Virus record (IMG/VR): IMGVR_UViG_3300023174_000036
Coordinates: 124,001-188,000 of that record
Direction: 5' to 3' (one strand)
DNA length: 64,000 nucleotides
The notes beneath the pieces were generated by a model. That model saw nothing but the letters and a program-made list of their open reading frames with translations. It was not told where the DNA came from and ran no database searches. Positions 21,018 through 35,664 of the stretch are shown in pieces (the stretch's first letter is position 1; each line of letters starts with the position of its first letter). The translations under genes and the position numbers were made by a program.

Positions 21018-21250
21018 GCTGTTAGCCCGTTTGCAAGTGATTGCAGTTCTTCTTTAGTCATAAAGAAGTTATAGGTTTGTGAATCACGCACAAGTCCATC
21101 TTCGTCTAAGGACTCTTGAATAATGTCCAAACTAAACAAACCCTTTGGAGCAAGTACTTCGTGTTTTTCTAATCGTACTCTAGATCCGGCGTTTTCTCTA
21201 ACAGTTATTTTTTTAGCAGTATGCGCTACTGATTCATGCAGTTCTTTCAT
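21014..21250 (-). CDS. hypothetical protein
   Basis: Coupled ORF. Confidence 0.55.
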   Translation of the reverse strand: MKELHESVAHTAKKITVRENAGSRVRLEKHEVLAPKGLFSLDIIQESLDEDGLVRDSQTYNFFMTKEELQSLANGLTA

Positions 21251-21663
21251 TATTCATCTCCTTTAATTGATTCGAATGTTCTATACTTACCCAATGCCGT
21301 AATGTATTCATCATACAGTTTCTTTAGCTTCGGATGCTTCTTTTCAAGTATAACATCTCTTTCAGGAATTTGCAAGACTTTTTCAATGGTGTTTAACCGT
21401 TCTTCTAAGTCTCGACCATTAATAACCATTCGACCTTTGACTTCTAATTCTGGAGGATTATTTTTGGCAACCAATACATCGGGAGTTATCCAATGTGGAT
21501 GAGCACCGGTTCCTGTAGTGGTATAAATCTGACCACTAACACCGCCAGCTGGGTAAACTGTTCCAACTGTTAGCGGAGTTGCAGGCGGAATAGCACCGTA
21601 TCCGACAGACACAGTGCTACCAACTAATCCATTACTGACGACGTTCTTCAAGGTAGTTGTCAT
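21250..21663 (-). CDS. hypothetical protein
   Basis: Thr/Gly-rich N-terminus, C-terminal HPKLKKLYDEY resembling YPGLKIAYEKF of 22053..22475. Confidence 0.6.
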   Translation of the reverse strand: MTTTLKNVVSNGLVGSTVSVGYGAIPPATPLTVGTVYPAGGVSGQIYTTTGTGAHPHWITPDVLVAKNNPPELEVKGRMVINGRDLEERLNTIEKVLQIPERDVILEKKHPKLKKLYDEYITALGKYRTFESIKGDE

Positions 21664-22087
21664 TATGAATCCATTTGTCTTTAACGAGGAATCCCCATTC
21701 TCTCGTTTGTGGACCTGGCATAAACAAGGTCCAAGGCGTTACGCCTTCTTTTAATTCAATTCGGTGATAGCTATTAGCACTACAAAATCTAAAATGTCCA
21801 GGTCCGCGCCATTTACGTATTTCGCAATTTCCACTGAGTACCCACTCATAATACCCGCCTGCTAGTATTAGTGTAAAGTACGGCCACGGATGATCGTGTA
21901 CATCACCGGGATCACCTTTGTGAAACTTGTGTAAGAACACATTGAATGGAAATGTTTTTCGATCTTTTAAAAACAAATAATAACGAGTTAACAACGGCTC
22001 GTTACACTGACGATCCATAATAACTCGTTTGCGATCATGTCGCTCTAACCAGTTAAGGCTTAGGTCTTTTATCTTTTGGAGTATCAT
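21632..22087 (-). CDS. cupin domain protein
   Basis: LHKF...HDHPWPYFTLILAGGYYE...SYHRIEL cupin motifs. Confidence 0.75.
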   Translation of the reverse strand: MILQKIKDLSLNWLERHDRKRVIMDRQCNEPLLTRYYLFLKDRKTFPFNVFLHKFHKGDPGDVHDHPWPYFTLILAGGYYEWVLSGNCEIRKWRGPGHFRFCSANSYHRIELKEGVTPWTLFMPGPQTREWGFLVKDKWIHNDNYLEERRQ

Positions 22088-22475
22088 AGTGATCTGTTAC
22101 TAGTTTATAAGTTGTTACAAATTTTTCGTAGGCTATCTTTAATCCAGGATATTCTTCACACATTTTTTCAATACGTTTAAAATCAGGAAAACAATTGACC
22201 CACTCTTCCGGAAAATTTATTGTAAACGAAGAAGTATCTATGCTAGTTATTGCACCAAGTTGTGCAGTAGTCAATCCTGCAATTTGTGTAGTAGTAATTG
22301 TTGAAATCGATGAACTACTATAATAACTAGGATAAGATACTACACAAGGATTATAACCAGTTAATGTAATAGTATCACTGTTATATGTATTGTGACAGTT
22401 TATACCACTTAAATCAATAGTGTACGTATCATTTAATGTTATCGATGAGTCCGGTTGCTGAGAAGAACTGCTCAT
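22053..22475 (-). CDS. hypothetical protein
   Basis: Ser/Thr-rich, C-terminal MCEEYPGLKIAYEKF. Confidence 0.6.
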   Translation of the reverse strand: MSSSSQQPDSSITLNDTYTIDLSGINCHNTYNSDTITLTGYNPCVVSYPSYYSSSSISTITTTQIAGLTTAQLGAITSIDTSSFTINFPEEWVNCFPDFKRIEKMCEEYPGLKIAYEKFVTTYKLVTDHYDTPKDKRPKP

Positions 22476-23541
22476 GTAATGCCTCCGTTTGTTTATGTAT
22501 AGACGGAATCATATGCGTGTAGTTATCCATATATTGGATTATCTTTGCGCATAAATTTGGTCTATATGTTGTGTAGGACTCAAAATTTTCAGTCCATTCA
22601 CTAGGATATTTAAATGTATCAAAGTACATTTCAGTATAACTAAGTCTATCAGGCACTAGTGGTATAGCATCAACTACTGCACCTTCGTAGCAACTAATGC
22701 CTAAAGTTTCTTGTAAGTTAGCACTAAACACCATCTTTGCTTCGCCTAACAAGTTATGATATTCATTTTTTGTTAGATATTGATCTTGGCAAACTACAAA
22801 TTCGTATTGTGGTAAATGAGTAGCGAGATCTCTAAAAATTTCAACTTGTTTTTCTGGAGCAATCCTGTGCGGAAATAAAATTAAGTCACGCTTAGGCATA
22901 CCCTTGTACGGTAACAAAGTATCGTGCATATATTCCATGGGCCAACCAGTACGTATAATTTTAGTATACTCGCCGGCTAGTATCTCACTCAGTTCCTCTT
23001 CATACCAGGGATTTTCTGTTTGGAACCCGCCATTAAGTAATTCCCTATGAAATAACTCAATATGAAAATTGGTAGCAAAATAGTTGTGATCAAATGCGTG
23101 GAAGAAACTTTTCTCCGCATTACGTACCCAAGGTTTGCCTCCAACAAGACGTCCTAGGAAATCTTGAGGATCATAACTGCCAGCATGCCATAAGCCATGT
23201 AAGGTCCAGTTAAAGCCTAATAGGTCCGACATATATTTCAGTTGGATCACAGTGGGGTTCCACGCATCTGTAAAGATAAAGTGATCGTCGGGACTGGTCT
23301 TGCCTTGATTGTGCTGTTCCAAGAACGCACACATTTGAGCACTCTTCCAATAGTTAGTATCGGAGAAGTTTAAGAACGCACCCGGAGTCAGTTGGCTGTT
23401 CTTCTGAACACCATCTACTTGAACCACATTAAACTTGTCGCCTAACTTGTTCTTGAGTAGTGCTGGCACATGACTGTGCCACTGTGCTGTATAGCGAGTC
23501 TCAATGGGCTCCAGTGAGAATATCCATATTGTTGATTTCAA
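22429..23541 (-). CDS. GT-B fold glycosyltransferase-like protein (TTG start)
   Basis: FPHRIAPEKQ and LQETLGISCYEG resemble GT4 nucleotide-sugar binding motifs; AGGAG RBS. Confidence 0.7.
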   Translation of the reverse strand: MKSTIWIFSLEPIETRYTAQWHSHVPALLKNKLGDKFNVVQVDGVQKNSQLTPGAFLNFSDTNYWKSAQMCAFLEQHNQGKTSPDDHFIFTDAWNPTVIQLKYMSDLLGFNWTLHGLWHAGSYDPQDFLGRLVGGKPWVRNAEKSFFHAFDHNYFATNFHIELFHRELLNGGFQTENPWYEEELSEILAGEYTKIIRTGWPMEYMHDTLLPYKGMPKRDLILFPHRIAPEKQVEIFRDLATHLPQYEFVVCQDQYLTKNEYHNLLGEAKMVFSANLQETLGISCYEGAVVDAIPLVPDRLSYTEMYFDTFKYPSEWTENFESYTTYRPNLCAKIIQYMDNYTHMIPSIHKQTEALHEQFFSATGLIDNIK

Positions 23542-23559
23542 AGTTGTCTCCTATACTAC

Positions 23560-23588
23560 ATTATATAGTAAAGTGGGGTATAGGTCAA
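23560..23588 (-). promoter_or_regulatory. sigma70-type promoter for the glycosyltransferase
   Basis: TTGACC-17-TATAAT then AGGAG. Confidence 0.75.
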
Positions 23589-23606
23589 ATATATTTTGCT
23601 CATTCT

Positions 23607-23852
23607 TCAACTCCACCTTAACGCAAACCATGTGGCCAACTTGGGATCTTTGACTGTGATGGTGGGCACATATTTTGGTGCTAGGTTAAACCCTTCAAAC
23701 GCTTCATGTCCTTGTGGATACATCCGCTCACGCTTATAGAACCAAGTATAATCGTCGCTGTCATAAATGCTGGTCATGTTGCCTCTACCAATATTTTTAT
23801 ACAACCATTCAATACACCCTTCGGGTACACCTTGTGGAAACTCTACTCTCAT
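23607..23852 (-). CDS. hypothetical protein (island cassette)
   Basis: 81 aa ORF ending in junction repeat. Confidence 0.6.
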   Translation of the reverse strand: MRVEFPQGVPEGCIEWLYKNIGRGNMTSIYDSDDYTWFYKRERMYPQGHEAFEGFNLAPKYVPTITVKDPKLATWFALRWS

Positions 23853-24160
23853 ATATTTCCTAATCCAACTCTACTATAACCTAACTTGGACTTAATCTCT
23901 TTACGGTCTCGGTTCTTCTCTGGTTTCCATGCTCTAGGATCAACAGTTTCGCCCGTTAGTTCATAACGAAAATCTGGATCGTAGACCATATAGCCTAACT
24001 TGTTCCATTTGATTACGCCCGCATCAAAAAGAAAGACGCATCCACGACACATACAAAAACTGGCACCATTATCCGACCACACATTACCATTGACTGTGCC
24101 CACATACTTCACAACTTTTCCTGTGTTCATTTCTTTAAGTGCTTCGTAGTAATCAATCAT
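23849..24160 (-). CDS. hypothetical protein (island cassette)
   Basis: 103 aa ORF starting at junction variant. Confidence 0.6.
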   Translation of the reverse strand: MIDYYEALKEMNTGKVVKYVGTVNGNVWSDNGASFCMCRGCVFLFDAGVIKWNKLGYMVYDPDFRYELTGETVDPRAWKPEKNRDRKEIKSKLGYSRVGLGNI

Positions 24161-24303
24161 TCTTGTTCCATCTTACTAAAGTCAGGATCCCGGCTGTACC
24201 CGATATTAAAGTTACCGAGTTTCCACCAAAGATAGCGTCCACCATAATCACAGGTTTGTACTGTAAATCCAAGAAACTTAAAATGTGTAGTCCATTCAAT
24301 CAT
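24157..24303 (-). CDS. 48 aa hypothetical protein (not in ORF track)
   Basis: MIEWTTHFKFLGFTVQTCDYGGRYLWWKLGNFNIGYSRDPDFSKMEQE between two junction repeats. Confidence 0.55.
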   Translation of the reverse strand: MIEWTTHFKFLGFTVQTCDYGGRYLWWKLGNFNIGYSRDPDFSKMEQE

Positions 24304-24616
24304 TCTTCACTCCTAGTAATTCTTTGATCAGGGTCTTTTTATCTTCAGTTGACATACCATCAACTCCGAAATGTTCTTTAATCCTGTCCTTGATAACTTC
24401 AGAAACATTGCCATTGATACCGTCTTCACGAGTATACCAAACCTGTTCAATACATTCTCGAACAATCAACTCGGCGAACTTTTCAAACGAATCGTTTGAA
24501 TCAAAAATCACACCGGCATCTTCTTCGTATTCTTTGCCTTCTAAATTGTTATAGTTGATCCTACGCATAAAGTCAGCACCAGCCTGTACAGCAAGTTCTC
24601 GAATTCGTTCGTTCAT
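24296..24616 (-). CDS. hypothetical protein, MNERI(R/K)ELA family
   Basis: Shares MNERI.ELA, FAELIVRECI, IKEHFGV with next ORF. Confidence 0.75.
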   Translation of the reverse strand: MNERIRELAVQAGADFMRRINYNNLEGKEYEEDAGVIFDSNDSFEKFAELIVRECIEQVWYTREDGINGNVSEVIKDRIKEHFGVDGMSTEDKKTLIKELLGVKND

Positions 24617-24828
24617 TCTTCAACTCCGAAATGTTCTTTAATCTGGTCAATACACTGAGAACCACCGTTAAGCCAAGTGTCAACTGATTTAGGGACAGGA
24701 TCACTAATAACTTGTTCACAACATCCGATACATTCCCGAACAATCAACTCGGCGAAATATTCAATAGATTCTTCATCCTTTCTTAGGAAATTAGCCTGTA
24801 AAGCAAGTTCTTTAATTCGTTCGTTCAT
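24613..24828 (-). CDS. hypothetical protein, MNERI(R/K)ELA family
   Basis: Tandem paralog of 24296..24616. Confidence 0.75.
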   Translation of the reverse strand: MNERIKELALQANFLRKDEESIEYFAELIVRECIGCCEQVISDPVPKSVDTWLNGGSQCIDQIKEHFGVEE

Positions 24829-24831
24829 TCT

Positions 24832-24990
24832 TCAACTCCCGACTGTTAATCGTTTAGTCACCTTGCTATACCTTAGCCAAACGATTTTTGATCCATAACG
24901 GAACCTAAATCCAAGGCTACTTTTATCACCGATCGGATAAAAGTTAAAACCATTGCGGATCACTCCGCCTTCCTCTGTGATATGTATCAT
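24832..24990 (-). CDS. 52 aa hypothetical protein (not in ORF track)
   Basis: MIHITEEGGVIRNGFNFYPIG...VGS; ATGA overlap with endonuclease stop, ends in junction repeat. Confidence 0.55.
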   Translation of the reverse strand: MIHITEEGGVIRNGFNFYPIGDKSSLGFRFRYGSKIVWLRYSKVTKRLTVGS

Positions 24991-25587
24991 TTCTTTTCCT
25001 TACAGTTATCAAAGTGGTATCTCTTCATACCGCTAACTCCGCCTTGTTTAGCACAGTGAGGACAAACAAGTACAGGTTGTAGTGTTCCTTTCAGCGAAGT
25101 AGAAACACCCAATCTACCAGAAGGCAATCCCTTCCTACGCTTATTTGATTCTGATATATGTGGAGCAGGACCAGTTGCCTTGCCCTTGTTCCAAGGTGTT
25201 ATACCTTTCTTATGGATAGCATTGGCTTTACTTGTACTGGGCATTTTAACTCCAGCAGGAGCACCATCTAATCCATTCTCCGGAATCATATTAGCCCATA
25301 CTTTCTTGCCACGGGAATCTACAGCATCTACTATGTTATGGAATTCACTAAAGAATGTAGCAAACTCTACCAACTGATCCATGTCAGTAAATTCTTCACA
25401 CCATACAGTTGTGATATCTTCGCTGTGTTCTTTTAAGTGTCTCAACCAATACTTACCAGAACCCAAATAGGTCTGTGGGTCCTTGGTAGTCTTGCCAAAG
25501 TATCGTAGTCCAGTGGTATTGTGTTGCTTGATATAAAGCCAGGTTGGCTTAAATTCCGGTGATGGAATATTACTATAAATATTCATG
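24987..25587 (-). mobile_element. GIY-YIG (Seg-like) homing endonuclease gene with NUMOD3-like repeats
   Basis: WLYIKQHNTTGLRYFGKT, YLGSGKYW, PWNKGK, ISESNK, C-terminal CPHC...HFDNC; likely start MNIYSN at 25587 behind AGGA. Confidence 0.8.
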
Positions 25588-25649
25588 CTGATAGTTCCTA
25601 ATAAACTGTTAGAGTCAGTGGATGTTGGTAGCATCGCGACTGGCACTTT

Positions 25650-25657
25650 TATTTATA
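25650..25657 (-). promoter_or_regulatory. canonical T4 late promoter TATAAATA driving the endonuclease
   Basis: Exact TATAAATA overlapping the stop codon of the truncated GT fragment. Confidence 0.7.
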
Positions 25658-25928
25658 CAGAACAGTTAGAAAGAATAAGACTGTCGCCGGAATGAACGGC
25701 TCCGTTACAAAATAAACGGCCCATTTGCTCAACCTGACTAGCCTTGTATATATTGGTACCACCAAAATTAAGGAAAGCACCAGGAGTAGTGGCTGTAGGA
25801 ATATCCTCAGGGCCAGAGATAATTTGAACATGGTGTCCTGCCTTTTTAAGAAGTTTAGGCACATGGGATTTCCATTGTCCCGTGTACCGTGTTTCAACAG
25901 CTTCTAGATCAATTATGAATATGTTCAT
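25653..25928 (-). pseudogene. orphan N-terminal fragment of a glycosyltransferase homologous to 22429..23541
   Basis: LEAVETRYTGQWKSHVPKLL and TPGAFLNFGGTN match LEPIETRYTAQWHSHVPALL and TPGAFLNFSDTN; frame ends after about 82 homologous residues. Confidence 0.8.
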
Positions 25929-26184: not shown

Positions 26185-26589
26185 TTAGTACTTAATAAAT
26201 GAACCATTTTCTCCGTCTTCGGAGACTTCAATCCAGACCTCACGGTCTGGATACTTTTGTGAAATAGTGTCGTACAATTCGTCCGACATCATTTCGCAAC
26301 TCTTGTGATCTAGCGACAAAACACCTTGTGTGCTAGAATACAGTTGTTCAAGCCATCGCTTGAATTGTATGAATTCCACATCTCGGTCATTGTGGGTAAC
26401 ACTAAGCCATACCCTAAAATGAAAGATGTGACGATGAGGATAACCCAGAAACGATACATCATATTCATCTCCTGTAGCTAAGTTAGGGTTTGTTAATGCC
26501 GCTGGGTATTTGTGAATACCCTCCTTACGAAATGTAACCCAAATCATTTTGTTAGGGCGGATGTCTTGTTTAATAATCATTTTAGTCAA
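26185..26589 (-). CDS. QueD-like T-fold protein (DpdL-like candidate)
   Basis: FLGYPHRHIFHFRV, DVEFI.FK, SCEMM, EVSEDGENG; lacks the CxxxHGH of canonical QueD. Confidence 0.65.
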   Translation of the reverse strand: MTKMIIKQDIRPNKMIWVTFRKEGIHKYPAALTNPNLATGDEYDVSFLGYPHRHIFHFRVWLSVTHNDRDVEFIQFKRWLEQLYSSTQGVLSLDHKSCEMMSDELYDTISQKYPDREVWIEVSEDGENGSFIKY

Positions 26590-31431: not shown

Positions 31432-32174
31432 TACTTAGACTGTGCTGGAAGAATATAATCGTATACTGCAACACCGCTGTCGATGTTAATGTTCAACAAC
31501 CCACCATCTGCAATACGCATAGTAGCAGTACCGCTTAGTCCAAGAATACTTTGAACTTGATTAACGGGCCACGACCATGTTTGTTTTAGTTTGCCTTTGA
31601 CATTTGCTTGGAAAATAAAACTACCAGCGTGTGTGCTTGAATCACCAAAGCTAAACACCAAATGACCGTCTTCTGTTTTAACTTGAAAAACAGTTTCTTC
31701 TGAATGTGCATTTGATTGGAATTTCAATTTCTGTATACTGGCAACAGCAGGCGTAAATTCAATATCCCACTGTGCGCCTTTGAACTTGGCCGACTTCAAT
31801 TTGTCGTTAATAATGTCCTGGTTCATGAAACGATAATCGTTTTCAAAGTCAGCAGTTGCATTGATAAAATGCAAACCTGTTGGAACTTCTTCTCCGTTAC
31901 GTTGCTGTTTAACTACCTTGATAGTTGCACCTTCTTTGTACTCTGGACACTTGAGGTGAATATCTAGCTTGTTCAAGTTAGGCATGCCAAAGGTGCCTTC
32001 AAAGTCACTGACTGGTTCGTGCGCTTTGGCATTCAAAATAACGCTACGATCTTCAGCCATAGATTCGATTGTAGTTTCTTTGTCTGTTGCACTTACCTTG
32101 ACCAAAGGTAAAAAGCCCAAACTGTGTGTATGTGCTACTAGGTCTTGTAAAAAGTCTTTCATGAGATTCTCCAT
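31431..32174 (-). CDS. probable DNA sliding clamp/processivity factor
   Basis: About 245 aa alpha/beta pattern, SMAEDRSVI, ends YDYILPAQ like PCNA/gp45; near PolB. Confidence 0.55.
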   Translation of the reverse strand: MENLMKDFLQDLVAHTHSLGFLPLVKVSATDKETTIESMAEDRSVILNAKAHEPVSDFEGTFGMPNLNKLDIHLKCPEYKEGATIKVVKQQRNGEEVPTGLHFINATADFENDYRFMNQDIINDKLKSAKFKGAQWDIEFTPAVASIQKLKFQSNAHSEETVFQVKTEDGHLVFSFGDSSTHAGSFIFQANVKGKLKQTWSWPVNQVQSILGLSGTATMRIADGGLLNINIDSGVAVYDYILPAQSK

Positions 32175-32182
32175 ATGTTATG

Positions 32183-32211
32183 ATTATACTTAGGTTTTTT
32201 GATTATGTCAA
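32183..32211 (-). promoter_or_regulatory. perfect sigma70 promoter for clamp-dpdA operon
   Basis: TTGACA-17-TATAAT. Confidence 0.8.
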
Positions 32212-32981
32212 GCATTTTTTCTTACCGTTTCATTGTATTCCGCCGAAGCTTCTAAAATACTAAACGGTGCATTGATAGTTTTGGCATATTTTATAAATGC
32301 TTGAGTGTCTTTAGGAAAACACGCACCACCAAAACCACGTTCCCCATCAAGCCCAGGTACTAAGGTATGACTGGAACCAATTCTTTGATCATGTGTAATC
32401 ATTTGACGCACTATTGAATAGTCTGCACCATTTGCCTCACATATATCAAACAGTTGATTAAAAAAGGCTACTTTTGCCGCTAGGAAAGAGTTTATACTGT
32501 ACTTGGTCATAGCCGCTTCTAATTTAGTACATTGAAAAAACAGTTTACAATTAGGCAATACTGAACTAAAAGTCTCCTGCCAAAATCCTTCAGGATCTTC
32601 ACCGCCAATAATCATAAACTTTTGTTCGGCAAAGTCCTTAGCAGAAGTAGCCGCCCGTAAAAATTCTGGACTATACACAACGGAATGATCTTTATATACA
32701 TCATCGAATGCTTCCAGCGCACTAGGTGTTACAGTGCTTTTAATCATTACCGGCATAAAAATTGGCACTGTATCTAAAATATCAGCGATGTTTCGGACAT
32801 CACATATGCCATCTTCTGTGGTAGGAGTATTCACACAGATAATTAATCCGTCTGCATCTGGATGATCTTTTATTTGTTCTTCGGTATATTTTGGATCAAC
32901 AATTACAATTTCGTGTTTAGTTTGTAATGTTTGTCCAACTGCTTTGCCAACAAATCCGTATCCTGCAATTATAATTTTCAT
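32208..32981 (-). CDS. UDP-glucose/GDP-mannose dehydrogenase family protein (short form)
   Basis: IAGYGFVG, ICVNTP, IKSTV, SPEFL, TKYSINSFLA.K, FGGACFPKD; start moved to MKIII at 32981. Confidence 0.85.
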   Translation of the reverse strand: MKIIIAGYGFVGKAVGQTLQTKHEIVIVDPKYTEEQIKDHPDADGLIICVNTPTTEDGICDVRNIADILDTVPIFMPVMIKSTVTPSALEAFDDVYKDHSVVYSPEFLRAATSAKDFAEQKFMIIGGEDPEGFWQETFSSVLPNCKLFFQCTKLEAAMTKYSINSFLAAKVAFFNQLFDICEANGADYSIVRQMITHDQRIGSSHTLVPGLDGERGFGGACFPKDTQAFIKYAKTINAPFSILEASAEYNETVRKNA

Positions 32982-32982
32982 A

Positions 32983-35664
32983 TTAGAACTCGAAAAAACT
33001 GTTAAAGGTATTCTTTTCTTCTGTGCTGTTGATATCCCAGTTAAGAACACCAATTAAGTTGTCTAATTTATTATCAATAATTGTCTGTTCCATTTCGGCA
33101 TGATCAAATGCTAAATCTTTAAACCACTGCGGAAGTCGCAACTCGTCTACCGGATAAGCAACACTAGTAAAACCTAGTGCATTAGGTTTTAGTTTACATA
33201 CAATAACTTTAGCACCGTCTGTAATAGCCATGCTATACTTGTCTCCGTACATGCGTTTTAATGTGTTCCAATTAATACTTGCACGAACGTGACCAGGCAT
33301 ATTAGTCTTGCCAGCTTTGGCTTCTTTGGCTTGGTAGTCTGTAATGTTGTTGGCACGTTTTGGACTGCCTTTTTCCCAACCGGGACGAGCTTTAAATCGA
33401 ATTCTAAATTCACTAATATGATCCAATACTTGTTGTTCAGTTGCACCTGTCAATACTAGTTCAAGTACATCACTTAAAAAGTTTTGAATAAATTCAGGCG
33501 TGTCACTACGCTTGAGGTCCAACCCCATGGCTTTAATTTTGCCGGGTTTACCTTCAACGTCTGTACGTTTGCCTTCTTTGTCGTAATACAACACAGCATA
33601 ACGCTTCTTGGTAATAAACAAACTTTTACTACCAACAATCTCACGACCTGCTTTGATAACTTCTCCACGCGACTTGGGCACGTGAAACGAATCCAACATA
33701 AACTGTGGAAATGTACTGTTAACTTCCTCACCAATTTGGTCGTACAACTGAACAACTGATTCTTTAGTCCACGGCAACTGCCCTGCATTGATTTCTTTTT
33801 CCAATGTTTTATATGCTGAGAAATAACATGAGTCTGTATCACCGTAGATAATAGCTTTGCCTGTGTGATTGTATTCACCCGCAATAATCTCATTAACTTT
33901 ACTGGCCATGTGTTTAGCAATAGCACGACCTGTTAGTGTAGTTGATTGTCCGATACGCTTGTCAAAGAATCTACAACCGTTGTTAAGAATAGCACCATAC
34001 AAACTGTTCAAGTTAATTTTCTTGACTAGTTGTCGTTTGTCCCAGTATTCTTCTTCAACCTTATTGCCGGCTTTGATAGCTTCTTTAAGTTTAGCCTGCA
34101 TCTCTTTACGTTCAGCATACCAACGCTTTAACAAGCCAGGAATAATACCTTCTTTTTCATACGTGAAAATTGTGCCGTTGGCACTGAGGATCCACGGCTG
34201 GTTGCTTTCGTAAATTAATCTATACACTTCTGCGGCACTGACAACATCAGTGTCGCCGTTCTCCCAGTCAATAGTAATGTCTGTGCCAATTTCTTGATTT
34301 ATCACAGCAGTATACTCTAATGATCCAAACACACCTTCCCATGCCGCCGCAAAACTCTTACCTTTTGCTACAAGATTATCAATGTATTCTTGCGTAAGTG
34401 TTTGACGTAACTGCCCTACAATGGTCTCTGGCCCCATGTTAAGTGCTCTAATAGCACTAGGATACAGTGAGTTAATGTCTAGTGAACCGATCCAATCATG
34501 GATGCCTTCTTTAGGATAAGCAACATACGCACCTGCGGCCCCCTCGTTGCCTTCTCTGTCGTCCATTTTAGTTCTGTTGGGAACTTGGAAACCTCTGCGG
34601 TGTGCTTCGTTAATAATAGCCTGCTCAGTCACAGCCACAGCACCCATTGTAGTCTGTAACAACACAGTACATTCATGTGCCAGCGTGTTAGCAAGGTCCA
34701 TGAATTTTAATTTCTTGTCTAATTTTTCAAGAAGCATACAGTCATTGATGTTGTATTCAATGAAAGTTCTAAAATCATTGTTGTACAACTGATCCAATGT
34801 GCCTTCGTATTGCGTCTTACGCTCACCTAGTTCGTATTCAGCAATAGCATCCAGTCGATAGGTATGACGTTCTTCATAAGTATACTTTCGATACAGTTCA
34901 AGACTATCCAAGTGTACACGACCAATAAAGTCGTATGTAACAGCTTGTCTTCCATATTTTTCATATTCACGTTTCTTTGGCAATTGGTCAAACAAACAAA
35001 AACGTCTTGTATCTTCTTTGCTTAATGCCTTGGTCACACGATTAACCGTGTAGGGAATATCAAAGCCTTCGCTGTTCCAACCACTCAGTACATCAGCATC
35101 TTTGATCAAATCCAAGAACACATCCAACATCTCTGCTTCTGTTTCATACAGCATTACGTTGTCAAAGTCTTTGACCATTTCTTTGGCATCCGCCATGTTG
35201 AGTTTCTTGGGTGGCACAGCCAAACATATCATTGTTTCCATCCATTGTAGGTAAACAGCAATCGCAGTGATTGGCATAAATGCATCATCGGGTGACGCAT
35301 AGCCACGCTCTGGGTCGAAGTCTACTTCAATATCGAAAAATGCTACATTTAGTTTGGGAGGTTCTGCGTTTAGATAGTTTTCGCTTAGACAAACAAAGAT
35401 GGGGTTAATGTCTGCTTCAAACAGTTTTTTGCTTGAATTAATAGCTTGTTCTTTTCTTAGCTCTTTGGTATTTTTACAAATAATACGTGTGAGTGGATCA
35501 CCGTAAATACTTTGAAATTTGCCCTTGGGGTCTTTAAAGTAAAACGTGTGTTTGACAGGAATGTCACGGAACTCACGTTCTTGTTTTTTATTACGTTCGA
35601 CCACTTTAATAACGTCATTCTCGCGGTCAAACCATGCGTCTACATAGCTCAATATATTCTCCAT
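32983..35664 (-). CDS. family B DNA polymerase (T4 gp43-like)
   Basis: FFDIEV exonuclease, DINSLYPS, KINLNSLYG, YGDTDS, KKRY; true start may be TTG 35652. Confidence 0.97.
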   Translation of the reverse strand: MENILSYVDAWFDRENDVIKVVERNKKQEREFRDIPVKHTFYFKDPKGKFQSIYGDPLTRIICKNTKELRKEQAINSSKKLFEADINPIFVCLSENYLNAEPPKLNVAFFDIEVDFDPERGYASPDDAFMPITAIAVYLQWMETMICLAVPPKKLNMADAKEMVKDFDNVMLYETEAEMLDVFLDLIKDADVLSGWNSEGFDIPYTVNRVTKALSKEDTRRFCLFDQLPKKREYEKYGRQAVTYDFIGRVHLDSLELYRKYTYEERHTYRLDAIAEYELGERKTQYEGTLDQLYNNDFRTFIEYNINDCMLLEKLDKKLKFMDLANTLAHECTVLLQTTMGAVAVTEQAIINEAHRRGFQVPNRTKMDDREGNEGAAGAYVAYPKEGIHDWIGSLDINSLYPSAIRALNMGPETIVGQLRQTLTQEYIDNLVAKGKSFAAAWEGVFGSLEYTAVINQEIGTDITIDWENGDTDVVSAAEVYRLIYESNQPWILSANGTIFTYEKEGIIPGLLKRWYAERKEMQAKLKEAIKAGNKVEEEYWDKRQLVKKINLNSLYGAILNNGCRFFDKRIGQSTTLTGRAIAKHMASKVNEIIAGEYNHTGKAIIYGDTDSCYFSAYKTLEKEINAGQLPWTKESVVQLYDQIGEEVNSTFPQFMLDSFHVPKSRGEVIKAGREIVGSKSLFITKKRYAVLYYDKEGKRTDVEGKPGKIKAMGLDLKRSDTPEFIQNFLSDVLELVLTGATEQQVLDHISEFRIRFKARPGWEKGSPKRANNITDYQAKEAKAGKTNMPGHVRASINWNTLKRMYGDKYSMAITDGAKVIVCKLKPNALGFTSVAYPVDELRLPQWFKDLAFDHAEMEQTIIDNKLDNLIGVLNWDINSTEEKNTFNSFFEF

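What the first reader, a model, noticed from the sequence alone, without database searches (positions are those of the whole stretch)
23600..24990. Small-gene cassette array joined by a repeated RBS-stop-start junction GGAGTTGAAGAATGA
Three exact and two variant copies of a 15-mer mark gene boundaries. It encodes GVEE-stop (or WS/GS-stop in another frame) while providing GGAG plus ATG for the next gene. Two cassettes are paralogs sharing DNA repeats (CAACTCCGAAATGTTCTTTAATC at 24361 and 24621; CGAACAATCAACTCGGCGAA near 24459 and 24737). The last junction leads only to a 15-codon stub over the GT promoter. Inference: microhomology-driven plug-in gene shuffling, an integrase-free cassette system in which any inserted gene is automatically translationally coupled.
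Basis: partly seen in the sequence, partly recalled or inferred. Interest (0 to 1): 0.68.

Follow-up and report, generated by a model that had tools for sequence, protein, structure and literature searches.

The report
Shuffled small-gene island in jumbo phage
A 2.5 kb homing-endonuclease island inside a sugar-transferase gene of a 356 kb lake phage carries small genes that related phages swap at short stop/start joints, and the main joint is the nucleotide-invariant end of a very large, unannotated phage protein family.

Summary
GGAGTTGAAGAATGA occurs exactly three times in the 356 kb genome, all in this array, each at a stop/start overlap.

The 15-mer is not a generic cassette joint. It is the invariant 3' end (…HFGVEE-stop) of a small three-helix protein family with at least 7,814 clusters and no annotation. 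Its genes keep three blocks identical even at synonymous sites, while the segments between them reassort freely: 38 gene pairs share one module and none share both.

The whole array (about 23201-25683) is cargo of a Seg-like GIY-YIG homing-endonuclease island. The island is inserted in a glycosyltransferase gene and is absent from a relative that is ~100% identical in the flanks. It brings its own promoter and a replacement 5' end for the gene.

About a dozen island variants carry different cargo. All three 15-mer copies coincide with homology breakpoints, but so do nearly all the other gene junctions. The genome has a RecA/UvsX-type recombinase and no integrase.

Short-homology exchange at coupled junctions is likely. 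A dedicated plug-in system for any gene is not shown.

The parts
23201..25683 (-). Block absent from the near-identical relative L005: the island insertion (23292-25683) plus a ~90-nt donor-like co-conversion tract (23201-23291)
   Evidence: L005 matches window 30000->25684 at 99.98%, then continues directly at 23291; both flanks are ~100% identical for at least 8 kb; mismatches cluster at 23300-23201 and then stop.
25653..25928 (-). 5' fragment of the original glycosyltransferase gene (82 native codons plus 9 new ones and a stop); left homology arm of the island
   Evidence: identical to the first 82 codons of the intact GT of L005. The joint lies in the motif (G/D)D-HF(V/I)FTDAW.
24987..25646 (-). 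Free-standing homing endonuclease HE219 (Seg-like GIY-YIG N-terminal motif, C-terminal Cys/His motif); single copy in the genome
   Evidence: weak match to phrog_655 (homing endonuclease); homologs hit NUMOD3 (14 of 21), SegE_GIY-YIG (3) and GIY-YIG (1); one copy in G000.
24832..24990 (-). s52, an orphan gene that stops inside 15-mer copy A in frame B
   Evidence: L309 has s52 (96%) followed by the exact 15-mer and then a different gene (z78).
24825..24839 (-). 15-mer copy A (SD GGAG, 7-nt spacer, ATG of pA71, two stops)
   Evidence: WIN and L309 homology ends exactly at 24825.
24613..24828 (-). pA71, a member of the MNERI…FAELIVREC…HFGVEE family
   Evidence: its second variable module is 98% identical to that of L093:8186, while the first modules are unrelated.
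24613..24627 (-). 15-mer copy B (end of pA71 in frame A, start of pB106)
   Evidence: in L007, L099 and L313 a family gene end with this 15-mer is joined directly to the sequence that follows copy C.
24296..24616 (-). pB106, a family member with the C-terminal extension …DGMSTEDKKTLIKELLGVKND
   Evidence: its first module is 92% identical to those of L084 and L085, and its second module is 86-94% identical to those of six other genes.
24300..24313 (-). Variant junction GGAGTGAAGAATGA (pB106 to s48)
   Evidence: the same variant ends the extension-type family genes of L093 and L098.
24157..24303 (-). s48, an orphan gene bracketed by a 12-nt exact direct repeat AAGAATGATTGA
   Evidence: present in L098 (90%) and absent in L093, where the family gene runs directly into s103.
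23849..24160 (-). s103, an orphan gene found with many different neighbours
   Evidence: preceded by the 15-mer (L224), by the variant junction (L093) or by s48 (L098). Followed by s81, by family genes or by the stub.
23607..23852 (-). s81, an orphan gene that stops inside 15-mer copy C in frame B
   Evidence: in L008 it ends …RWSS-stop and overlaps the start of gene x.
23600..23614 (-). 15-mer copy C, the right edge of the variable cargo
   Evidence: the same 15-mer plus stub is preceded by family genes, by x or by s81 in different island variants.
23556..23603 (-). 15-codon stub; its first 11 nt equal the start of gene x of L008 and L309
23560..23588 (-). Sigma70-like promoter for the restored GT gene (TTGACC-N17-TATAAT)
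   Evidence: 11 of 12. Conserved in L007, L008 and L099.
22429..23541 (-). Intact, chimeric glycosyltransferase gene (TTG start). The 5' part down to ~23201 came with the island; the rest is native.
   Evidence: (relatives annotated as glycosyltransferase).

Best explanation
There are two layers.

Layer 1, the island. Window ~23201-25683 is the cargo of a mobile island driven by a Seg-like GIY-YIG homing endonuclease. The enzyme most likely cuts island-free alleles of the glycosyltransferase gene near codon 82. Repair then copies the island in from a co-infecting carrier. The island leaves the old 5' end behind as a dead fragment and supplies a promoter and a divergent replacement 5' end, so the gene stays functional.

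Layer 2, the cargo. Inside the island, small genes turn over by recombination at their translationally coupled junctions. The 15-mer is the nucleotide-invariant 3' block (…HFGVEE-stop) of a very large family of small three-helix proteins. The same block is the Shine-Dalgarno sequence, spacer and start codon of whatever gene follows. Together with the family's invariant 5' block and core block, it gives 15-27 nt of perfect identity scattered through arrays and genomes. General homologous or short-homology recombination, by the phage's RecA/UvsX-type machinery and break repair during co-infection, uses these blocks. The result is swapped protein modules, duplicated or deleted family genes, and exchanged neighbouring genes. 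Selection keeps products in which the downstream gene retains its ribosome site.

Shown: the anatomy, the presence/absence polymorphism, the co-conversion tract, module reassortment, breakpoint positions and synonymous-site invariance. Inferred: cleavage by the endonuclease, the recombination mechanism, and translational coupling.
For: Island:
- L005 is 99.98-100% identical on both flanks for at least 8 kb and lacks 23292-25683.
- The left joint is sharp. On the right, a ~90-nt tract is donor-like.
- 68 GT loci with an upstream anchor have no island.
- Homologs of the endonuclease carry NUMOD3 and SegE/GIY-YIG domains.

Family block:
- 18 of 18 genes ending GVEE use exactly the same 15 nt, although GGA, GTT and GAA make up 27%, 48% and 82% of their codon classes.
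- The core Glu codon is GAG in 27 of 27 genes. The rest of the gene has a median nucleotide identity of 50%.
- In the larger set of 153 genes, 45-48% keep each block exactly.

Reassortment: 38 of 3,828 gene pairs share one variable module at >=80% nucleotide identity while the other is <60%. None share both.

Junction use:
- At least 15 different downstream genes start at the embedded ATG.
- Non-family genes stop in it in frame B.

Breakpoints:
- WIN/L309 homology ends at 24825.
- L007, L099 and L313 join copy B to copy C.
- Gene x is flanked by TGGAGTT…ATGAGCAAAAT repeats, and s48 by a 12-nt repeat.

Other: the junction RNA is unstructured. A RecA-family recombinase is present, and integrase, resolvase and reverse transcriptase are absent.
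Against: - Nearly all the other junctions of the array are breakpoints as well, some with only 5 nt of shared sequence (ATGAG, AATGA). Illegitimate recombination filtered by selection could therefore explain much of the pattern without any role for the 15-mer.
- No recombination intermediate or junction-to-junction deletion could be seen. Only short contigs were available, and they break at the repeats.
- HE219 itself reaches no Pfam threshold.
- Family arrays are usually not next to an endonuclease: 2 of 15 and 4 of 39 loci.
- All comparison sequences are metagenome assemblies. Several architectures do recur in 3-7 independent contigs.
- Why synonymous sites in the internal core block are frozen remains unexplained.
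Confidence: 0.6

Rival explanations
1. Ordinary reading. The repeats are by-products of a paralogous family whose C-terminus and ribosome site are conserved for protein function and translation only. Cargo differences arise by random illegitimate recombination, and selection keeps only events at gene boundaries. The 15-mer has no role in recombination.
For: Nearly all junctions in the array are breakpoints, not only the 15-mers, and some share just 5 nt. In loci not chosen through the motif the 15-mer always follows a family member. The conserved blocks coincide with the three predicted helices. The junction RNA is open, as suits a ribosome site.
Against: Protein function does not explain frozen synonymous sites in three blocks (18/18, 27/27, 17/20) within genes otherwise at ~50% nucleotide identity. 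Module exchange happens precisely across the internal core block, which is no gene boundary, so gene-boundary selection cannot explain it. The same 15 nt end unrelated genes in a second reading frame.
Confidence: 0.25
2. This is a dedicated, integrase-free cassette platform. The 15-mer is a specific attachment joint at which any gene, perhaps as a small circle, plugs in and becomes translationally coupled.
For: The exact 15-mer lies between many unrelated gene pairs. It offers stops in two frames plus an SD and an ATG. Gene x and pA71 are bracketed by direct copies, as expected after a single crossover with a circle. There is no integrase in the genome. The model parallels the PeSL mini-circles of T4-type phages (PMC2839356).
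Against: There are only three copies in 356 kb, all in one island. Occurrence is tied to one gene family. Other junction sequences serve equally well as breakpoints. The array entered this genome as one block through an endonuclease island. No circles or deletion forms were observed. About 100 chance matches are expected in the viral collection (my own estimate), so part is noise.
Confidence: 0.1
3. The invariant blocks are binding or cleavage sites for a regulator, for example a translational repressor or an SD-cutting RNase like RegA or RegB of T4. They would be conserved for co-regulation of the family, and recombination at them would be incidental.
For: Conservation is at the nucleotide level, including the spacer between SD and ATG. 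The core and 3' blocks share the heptamer GAGTTGA. The link to RegA/RegB is my own knowledge and was not tested.
Against: The 5' block and the core block have no common motif with each other. No known RNA family matches and there is no structure. No regulator candidate was identified.
Confidence: 0.05

Closest known systems
PeSL regulatory cassettes of T4-type phages (Arbiol et al. 2010, PMC2839356; Comeau et al. 2014, PMC4122927)
   Same: Short conserved repeats flank orphan genes in hyperplastic regions. Close relatives differ by presence or absence of the flanked gene with one repeat copy left behind. The proposed mechanism is homologous recombination between repeats without a site-specific recombinase. 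The repeat also supplies expression signals to the gene it brings.
   Different: PeSLs are ~100-bp non-coding promoter plus stem-loop terminator units. Here the repeat is 15-27 nt, is coding (the end of one gene and the start of the next), supplies translation signals and not transcription signals, has no stem-loop, and belongs to one protein family. Mini-circles were shown for PeSLs and could not be tested here.
Free-standing Seg/Mob homing endonucleases of T4-like phages, intronless homing with co-conversion (Edgell et al. 2010, PMC2988022; SegB, PMC2330249; HEGs at exchange boundaries, PMC10448857)
   Same: A GIY-YIG/NUMOD-type gene sits in or next to a conserved gene. It shows presence/absence polymorphism among near-identical genomes, and flanking sequence is co-converted.
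   Different: The insertion lies inside the target gene. It carries six passenger genes plus a promoter and a divergent replacement for the first ~110 codons of the target, so the gene is restored and not split. Cleavage has not been demonstrated.
Integron gene cassettes
   Same: A one-way array of small, promoterless genes of varied content, joined by a recurring sequence.
   Different: There is no integrase. The joint is not a folded attC. The joint overlaps coding sequence on both sides, and there is no attI/Pc platform.
Internal-protein (IP) locus of T-even phages, where a conserved N-terminal leader sequence bounds swapped genes (Repoila et al. 1994, cited from my own knowledge; not read here)
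   Same: This is a hypervariable locus of small genes. They share a short conserved coding block at the gene end, and that block marks the exchange points.
   Different: There the block is the 5' capsid-targeting leader of packaged proteins. Here three blocks exist and the 3' one doubles as the next gene's ribosome site. Packaging of this family is unknown.
Homeologous or short-homology recombination as a source of phage mosaicism (Martinsohn et al. 2008, PMC2327257)
   Same: Phage recombinases exchange diverged sequences at short identical stretches, giving mosaics with breakpoints in conserved islands.
   Different: That was shown for lambda Red in temperate phages. Here the recombinase is RecA/UvsX-like in a jumbo lytic-type phage, and nothing was measured.

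Membership tests
Integron-type cassette system | Tyrosine recombinase (IntI) encoded with the array | tested here: not met
   No PF00589 or PF00239 match in the 356 kb genome, and the controls were positive.
Integron-type cassette system | Cassette joint is an imperfect inverted repeat that folds (attC) | tested here: not met
   Junction contexts fold no better than shuffles: z +1.87, -0.70, +0.77.
PeSL modular shuffling | Repeat unit is a sigma70 promoter plus a stem-loop terminator of ~100 bp | tested here: not met
   Only one strong promoter-like site, at the stub (23588-23560). No terminator-like hairpin at the junctions. The repeat is 15-26 nt.
PeSL modular shuffling | Repeats bracket orphan genes that are differentially present in close relatives, leaving one copy | tested here: met
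   Gene x (L008 and L309 against WIN), pB106-to-s81 (WIN against L007, L099 and L313), and the segment after s52 (WIN against L309).
PeSL modular shuffling | Excised mini-circles | not testable with these tools
   Only short contigs of public runs were available, and they break at the repeats.
Seg-like GIY-YIG free-standing homing endonuclease | GIY-YIG catalytic domain | tested here: inconclusive
   P0001 has no Pfam hit. Four of 21 homologs hit SegE_GIY-YIG or GIY-YIG. The N-terminus reads …LYIKQHNTTGLRYFGKT…, which is GIY…YIG-like.
Seg-like GIY-YIG free-standing homing endonuclease | NUMOD-type DNA-binding modules | tested here: inconclusive
   NUMOD3 in 14 of 21 homologs, best E 7.6e-28, but not in P0001 itself at E<=0.01.
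Seg-like GIY-YIG free-standing homing endonuclease | Presence/absence polymorphism in otherwise identical genomes, with co-conversion of flanks | tested here: met
   L005 against the window.
Seg-like GIY-YIG free-standing homing endonuclease | Site-specific cleavage of the endonuclease-free allele | not testable with these tools
   Needs the enzyme and a substrate.
Translationally coupled (termination-reinitiation) junction | Stop overlapping or just upstream of the next start, with an SD 5-9 nt upstream | tested here: met
   GGAG, then 7 nt, then ATG. TGA overlaps the ATG (frame A) or lies 3 nt upstream of it (frame B).
Translationally coupled (termination-reinitiation) junction | Downstream translation depends on upstream translation | not testable with these tools
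   No RNA or ribosome data; none of the 20 runs that hold the stretch is RNA.
Diversity-generating retroelement | Reverse transcriptase with template and variable repeats | tested here: not met
   No PF00078 match in the genome. The variable modules are unalignable and are not point-mutated copies.

The most novel reading that the evidence does not exclude
The MNERI…HFGVEE genes could be self-spreading mini-cassettes. Their three frozen nucleotide blocks would be maintained as recombination joints. Family genes and any neighbour captured between two joints would then excise and re-insert at any other copy, within and between co-infecting phages. That would give jumbo phages an integron-like, recombinase-independent platform for gene capture and protein-module shuffling, with built-in translational coupling. 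The family's hypervariability (at least 7,814 clusters) would reflect an arms-race function such as anti-defence.
Probability: 0.15. Interest if true: 0.8.

Novelty: new variant of a known kind. Interest (0 to 1): 0.55.

Why it matters
How phages gain, lose and reshuffle their many small orphan genes is a long-standing question: illegitimate recombination plus selection, or exchange at short conserved linkers.

This locus offers a compact natural test case:
- A very abundant uncharacterised protein family keeps three nucleotide-frozen blocks and visibly reassorts its modules across them.
- One of those blocks is also the ribosome site of the next gene, so an exchange there swaps neighbours without breaking expression.
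- The locus also shows a homing-endonuclease island that carries passenger genes and repairs the gene it interrupts by bringing a replacement 5' end and a promoter.

Both features can be tested directly with crosses and reporter constructs. The family is a candidate repertoire of host-interaction proteins in freshwater jumbo phages.

Tried and rejected
- **Pfam and PHROGs scans:** scans of all ten proteins of the region gave nothing usable. My by-eye 'QueD' label for the 134-aa neighbour (26185-26589) got no Pfam support and was dropped.
- **Megablast against phage records:** no match. The nearest cultured relatives of the GT are only 37-48% identical: Sinorhizobium phage Phosso, the Pseudomonas PA5oct group and Acidovorax ACP17.
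- **PDB by sequence:** no match for the endonuclease or its profile.
- **Fold of pA71:** a confident three-helix bundle (pLDDT 85) with no PDB match at E<=0.001, so no functional lead.
- **Laying public runs to find junction-to-junction deletions or circles:** only Logan contigs were available. They break at 24125, 24618 and 24814, and the many 'joints' come from other community genomes that share the family blocks, so no verdict.
- **Near-identical pairs among family-array loci, to map indel breakpoints:** none found apart from the window and L005.
- **General linkage of family arrays to endonuclease genes:** rejected, 2 of 15 and 4 of 39 loci.
- **Whole-protein homology of s81 and x (both end …WS-stop in the 15-mer):** not supported by BLASTP. 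Only the last ~35 nt before the 15-mer are alike at the DNA level.
- **Other exclusions:** RNA structure at the junctions, known RNA families and a DGR are all negative.
- **Non-family occurrences of the 15-mer:** I estimate about 100 chance matches in that collection, so only occurrences beside family genes are used as evidence.
- **Genetic code:** no alternative code was needed or used.
Full report
**Setting.** The window is bases 124001-188000 of a 356,312-base virus record, GC 40%, estimated 96% complete. It comes from lake metagenomes and is seen in at least 13 studies. The genes around the finding run on the - strand. The order is: an 82-aa gene (s82), a 91-codon GT fragment, a 219-aa endonuclease (HE219), s52, pA71, pB106, s48, s103, s81, a 15-codon stub, and a 370-aa glycosyltransferase (GT) with a TTG start. 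Relatives of the GT in cultured jumbo phages are annotated as glycosyltransferases. None of the small proteins has a Pfam or PHROG match.

**Observation.** The 15-mer occurs exactly three times (23600, 24613, 24825, - strand). These are the only copies with <=1 mismatch in the whole genome, where about 0.001 would be expected from composition. Each copy lies at a stop/start overlap and is read in two frames: GVEE-stop for pA71, and VGS-stop and RWS-stop for s52 and s81. Two degenerate versions join pB106 to s48 and s48 to s103. The third copy opens a 15-codon stub that overlies the best sigma70-like site of the region.

**What the 15-mer is.** In related viral contigs the same 15 nt recur exactly. 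Nearly always they form the last five codons of genes of one family: MNERI(K/R)ELAxQAG … KFAELIV(R/K)EC … (I/L)KEHFGVEE-stop, 62-106 aa.
- The family is very large. A profile search returned 7,814 significant clusters out of the 8,000 candidates scored, all unannotated and without a Pfam domain.
- pA71 folds as a three-helix bundle (pLDDT 85) with no significant structural match.
- The genes keep three blocks that are frozen at the nucleotide level. All 18 genes ending GVEE use the same 15 nt, although GGA, GTT and GAA make up only 27%, 48% and 82% of their codon classes. The core FAELI is TTCGCCGAGTTGATT, with GAG in 27 of 27. The 5' ATGAACGAACGAATT is exact in 17 of 20. Outside the blocks the median nucleotide identity is 50%.
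- In 153 distinct genes, 45-48% carry each block exactly.

**Module reassortment.** The two variable segments between the blocks assort independently. pA71 shares its second segment (98% nucleotide identity) with a gene of L093 whose first segment is unrelated. pB106 shares its first segment (92%) with genes of L084 and L085 whose second segments are unrelated. The C-terminal extension of pB106 is attached to at least five different second segments. Over 3,828 gene pairs, 38 share one segment at >=80% while the other is <60%, and none share both. Crossovers therefore fall in the conserved blocks, including the internal core block, which is not a gene boundary.

**The array is cargo of an endonuclease island.**
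- Contig L005 matches the window at 99.98-100% for at least 8 kb on each side but lacks 23292-25683. There, s82 runs straight into one intact GT.
- The left joint is sharp (25684/25683). On the right, mismatches continue to 23201 and then stop, which marks a one-sided co-conversion tract.
- Both joints lie in the conserved GT motif (G/D)D-HF(V/I)FTDAW.
- The insert leaves the first 82 native codons as a dead fragment. It carries a promoter, a ribosome site and a divergent replacement 5' end, so the GT is restored as a chimera.
- 68 GT loci with an upstream anchor have no island. The divergent 5' allele occurs naturally in other phages, but without the 15-mer, stub or TTGACC.
- HE219 is single-copy. 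Its homologs carry NUMOD3 (14 of 21) and SegE/GIY-YIG domains, although HE219 itself passes no Pfam threshold.
- This is the pattern known for free-standing Seg/Mob endonucleases (PMC2988022, PMC2330249, PMC10448857). The additions here are passenger genes and a replacement gene end.

**Cargo varies among island variants.** Searches with the endonuclease and with the stub/-35 sequence gave about a dozen architectures, several of them in 3-7 independent contigs. Examples, each read from the HE to the stub:
- Window: s52, pA71, pB106, s48, s103, s81.
- L008: family gene, s81, x.
- L099 and L313: one family gene.
- L100 group: family gene, y102.
- L311 and L312: family gene(s), s103.
- L309: s52, z78, two family genes, w89, s103, s81, x.
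- L007 and L299: decayed islands with no endonuclease.

The stub is preceded by a family gene, by x or by s81 through the exact 15-mer (frames A, B, B). It is preceded by s103 or y102 through a different TAATG joint.
- WIN and L309 are 94% identical from the GT fragment to the last base of copy A (24825). They then differ completely and realign at the s103 start codon.
- Gene x is bracketed by TGGAGTT…ATGAGCAAAAT repeats, and the window holds the single-copy form.
- s48 is bracketed by a 12-nt exact repeat and is absent in L093.

**Limits of the cassette idea.**
- The 15-mer is not a genome-wide joint. It accounts for 1 of 115 ATGA overlaps in this genome. In loci not chosen through the motif, its six occurrences all follow family genes.
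- Nearly all the other junctions in the array are breakpoints in some comparison, sometimes with only 5 nt in common. The pB106/s48 junction is conserved with L098.
- A scan for the 15-mer outside the family's Phe codon found 42 junction-like cases among 80 loci, 28 of which hold family genes. That scan was truncated, and I estimate about 100 chance matches for that collection.
- No deletion or circular forms could be tested. Contigs of public runs break at the repeats, and depth over the family blocks is 10-25x the baseline because many community genomes share them.
- The junction RNA is unstructured and matches no Rfam family.
- The genome has a RecA/UvsX-type recombinase and no integrase, resolvase or reverse transcriptase.

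**Conclusion.** The feature is real and more structured than a paralog repeat. It is the frozen 3' block of a very large mosaic gene family that doubles as the next gene's translation start, and it sits inside an endonuclease-borne island whose cargo turns over at coupled junctions. The closest known analogue is PeSL-mediated shuffling in T4-type phages (PMC2839356), with a coding/translation joint in place of a promoter-terminator cassette. Recombination at the blocks is inferred from comparative patterns and has not been observed. A dedicated plug-in mechanism remains a minority reading.

Noticed in passing
window 21300-22100 (genes 21250-21663 and the 3' end of 21632-22087): A second mosaic patch relative to L005. 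Identity drops to 58-80% inside flanks that are otherwise 99-100% identical, so the 137-aa gene has been replaced by a divergent allele (60% aa).
   Followed up: partly
L298, L300, L303, L305, L306 (after their stub) and L304:1-1500: Nested structure. After the stub, the promoter and the first ~32 codons of the GT, the gene is interrupted again. It is followed by up to eight more family genes (plus s48 and s103 in L300), and then, in L304, by s81, x, a second stub and promoter and the full GT. The right arm of the island is itself duplicated around more cargo.
   Followed up: partly
window 25650-25657 (- strand), just upstream of the HE219 start: TATAAATA, the consensus of T4 late promoters (my own knowledge), overlaps the stop of the GT fragment. 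It lies 3 nt before the GTG of the endonuclease gene and is conserved in all island variants.
   Followed up: no
L181, L182, L201, L206, L208, L223, L237, L247-L249, L255: In contigs without the MNERI family, an unrelated ~155-aa protein family ends …NKPKGVEE-stop with the identical 15-mer. At least six different genes start at its ATG. This may be chance plus many sequenced relatives, or a second user of the joint.
   Followed up: no
L007:7296-7410 and L299:2401-2526: Decayed islands without an endonuclease. A 15-18-codon remnant of the original GT start is fused to the last ~28 codons of an s103-like gene.
   Followed up: partly
window 24432-24939, runs X1, X2, X4, X6: Summed contig depth is 10-25 times the baseline over the family genes only. 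This shows that the frozen blocks are shared by many other genomes in the same lakes. Short-read assemblies break at 24125, 24618 and 24814.
   Followed up: partly
family N-terminus, e.g. window 24790-24828 (- strand): MNERIKE-LAE-QAG contains I/L-x-E motifs like the cleavage sites of the T4 prohead protease and the leader of T-even internal proteins (my own knowledge). The family might be packaged and injected. This is pure speculation and was not tested.
   Followed up: no
window 31600-33400 and near 34000: Further patches of 91-97% identity to L005, and 61% at the locus end, in the otherwise identical left flank.
   Followed up: no
core block (24459-24478, 24737-24756) compared with the 15-mer: The internal core block and the 3' block share the heptamer GAGTTGA, and both are followed within 4-11 nt by GAATG. 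It is unknown whether this is coincidence, common origin or a shared recognition motif.
   Followed up: no
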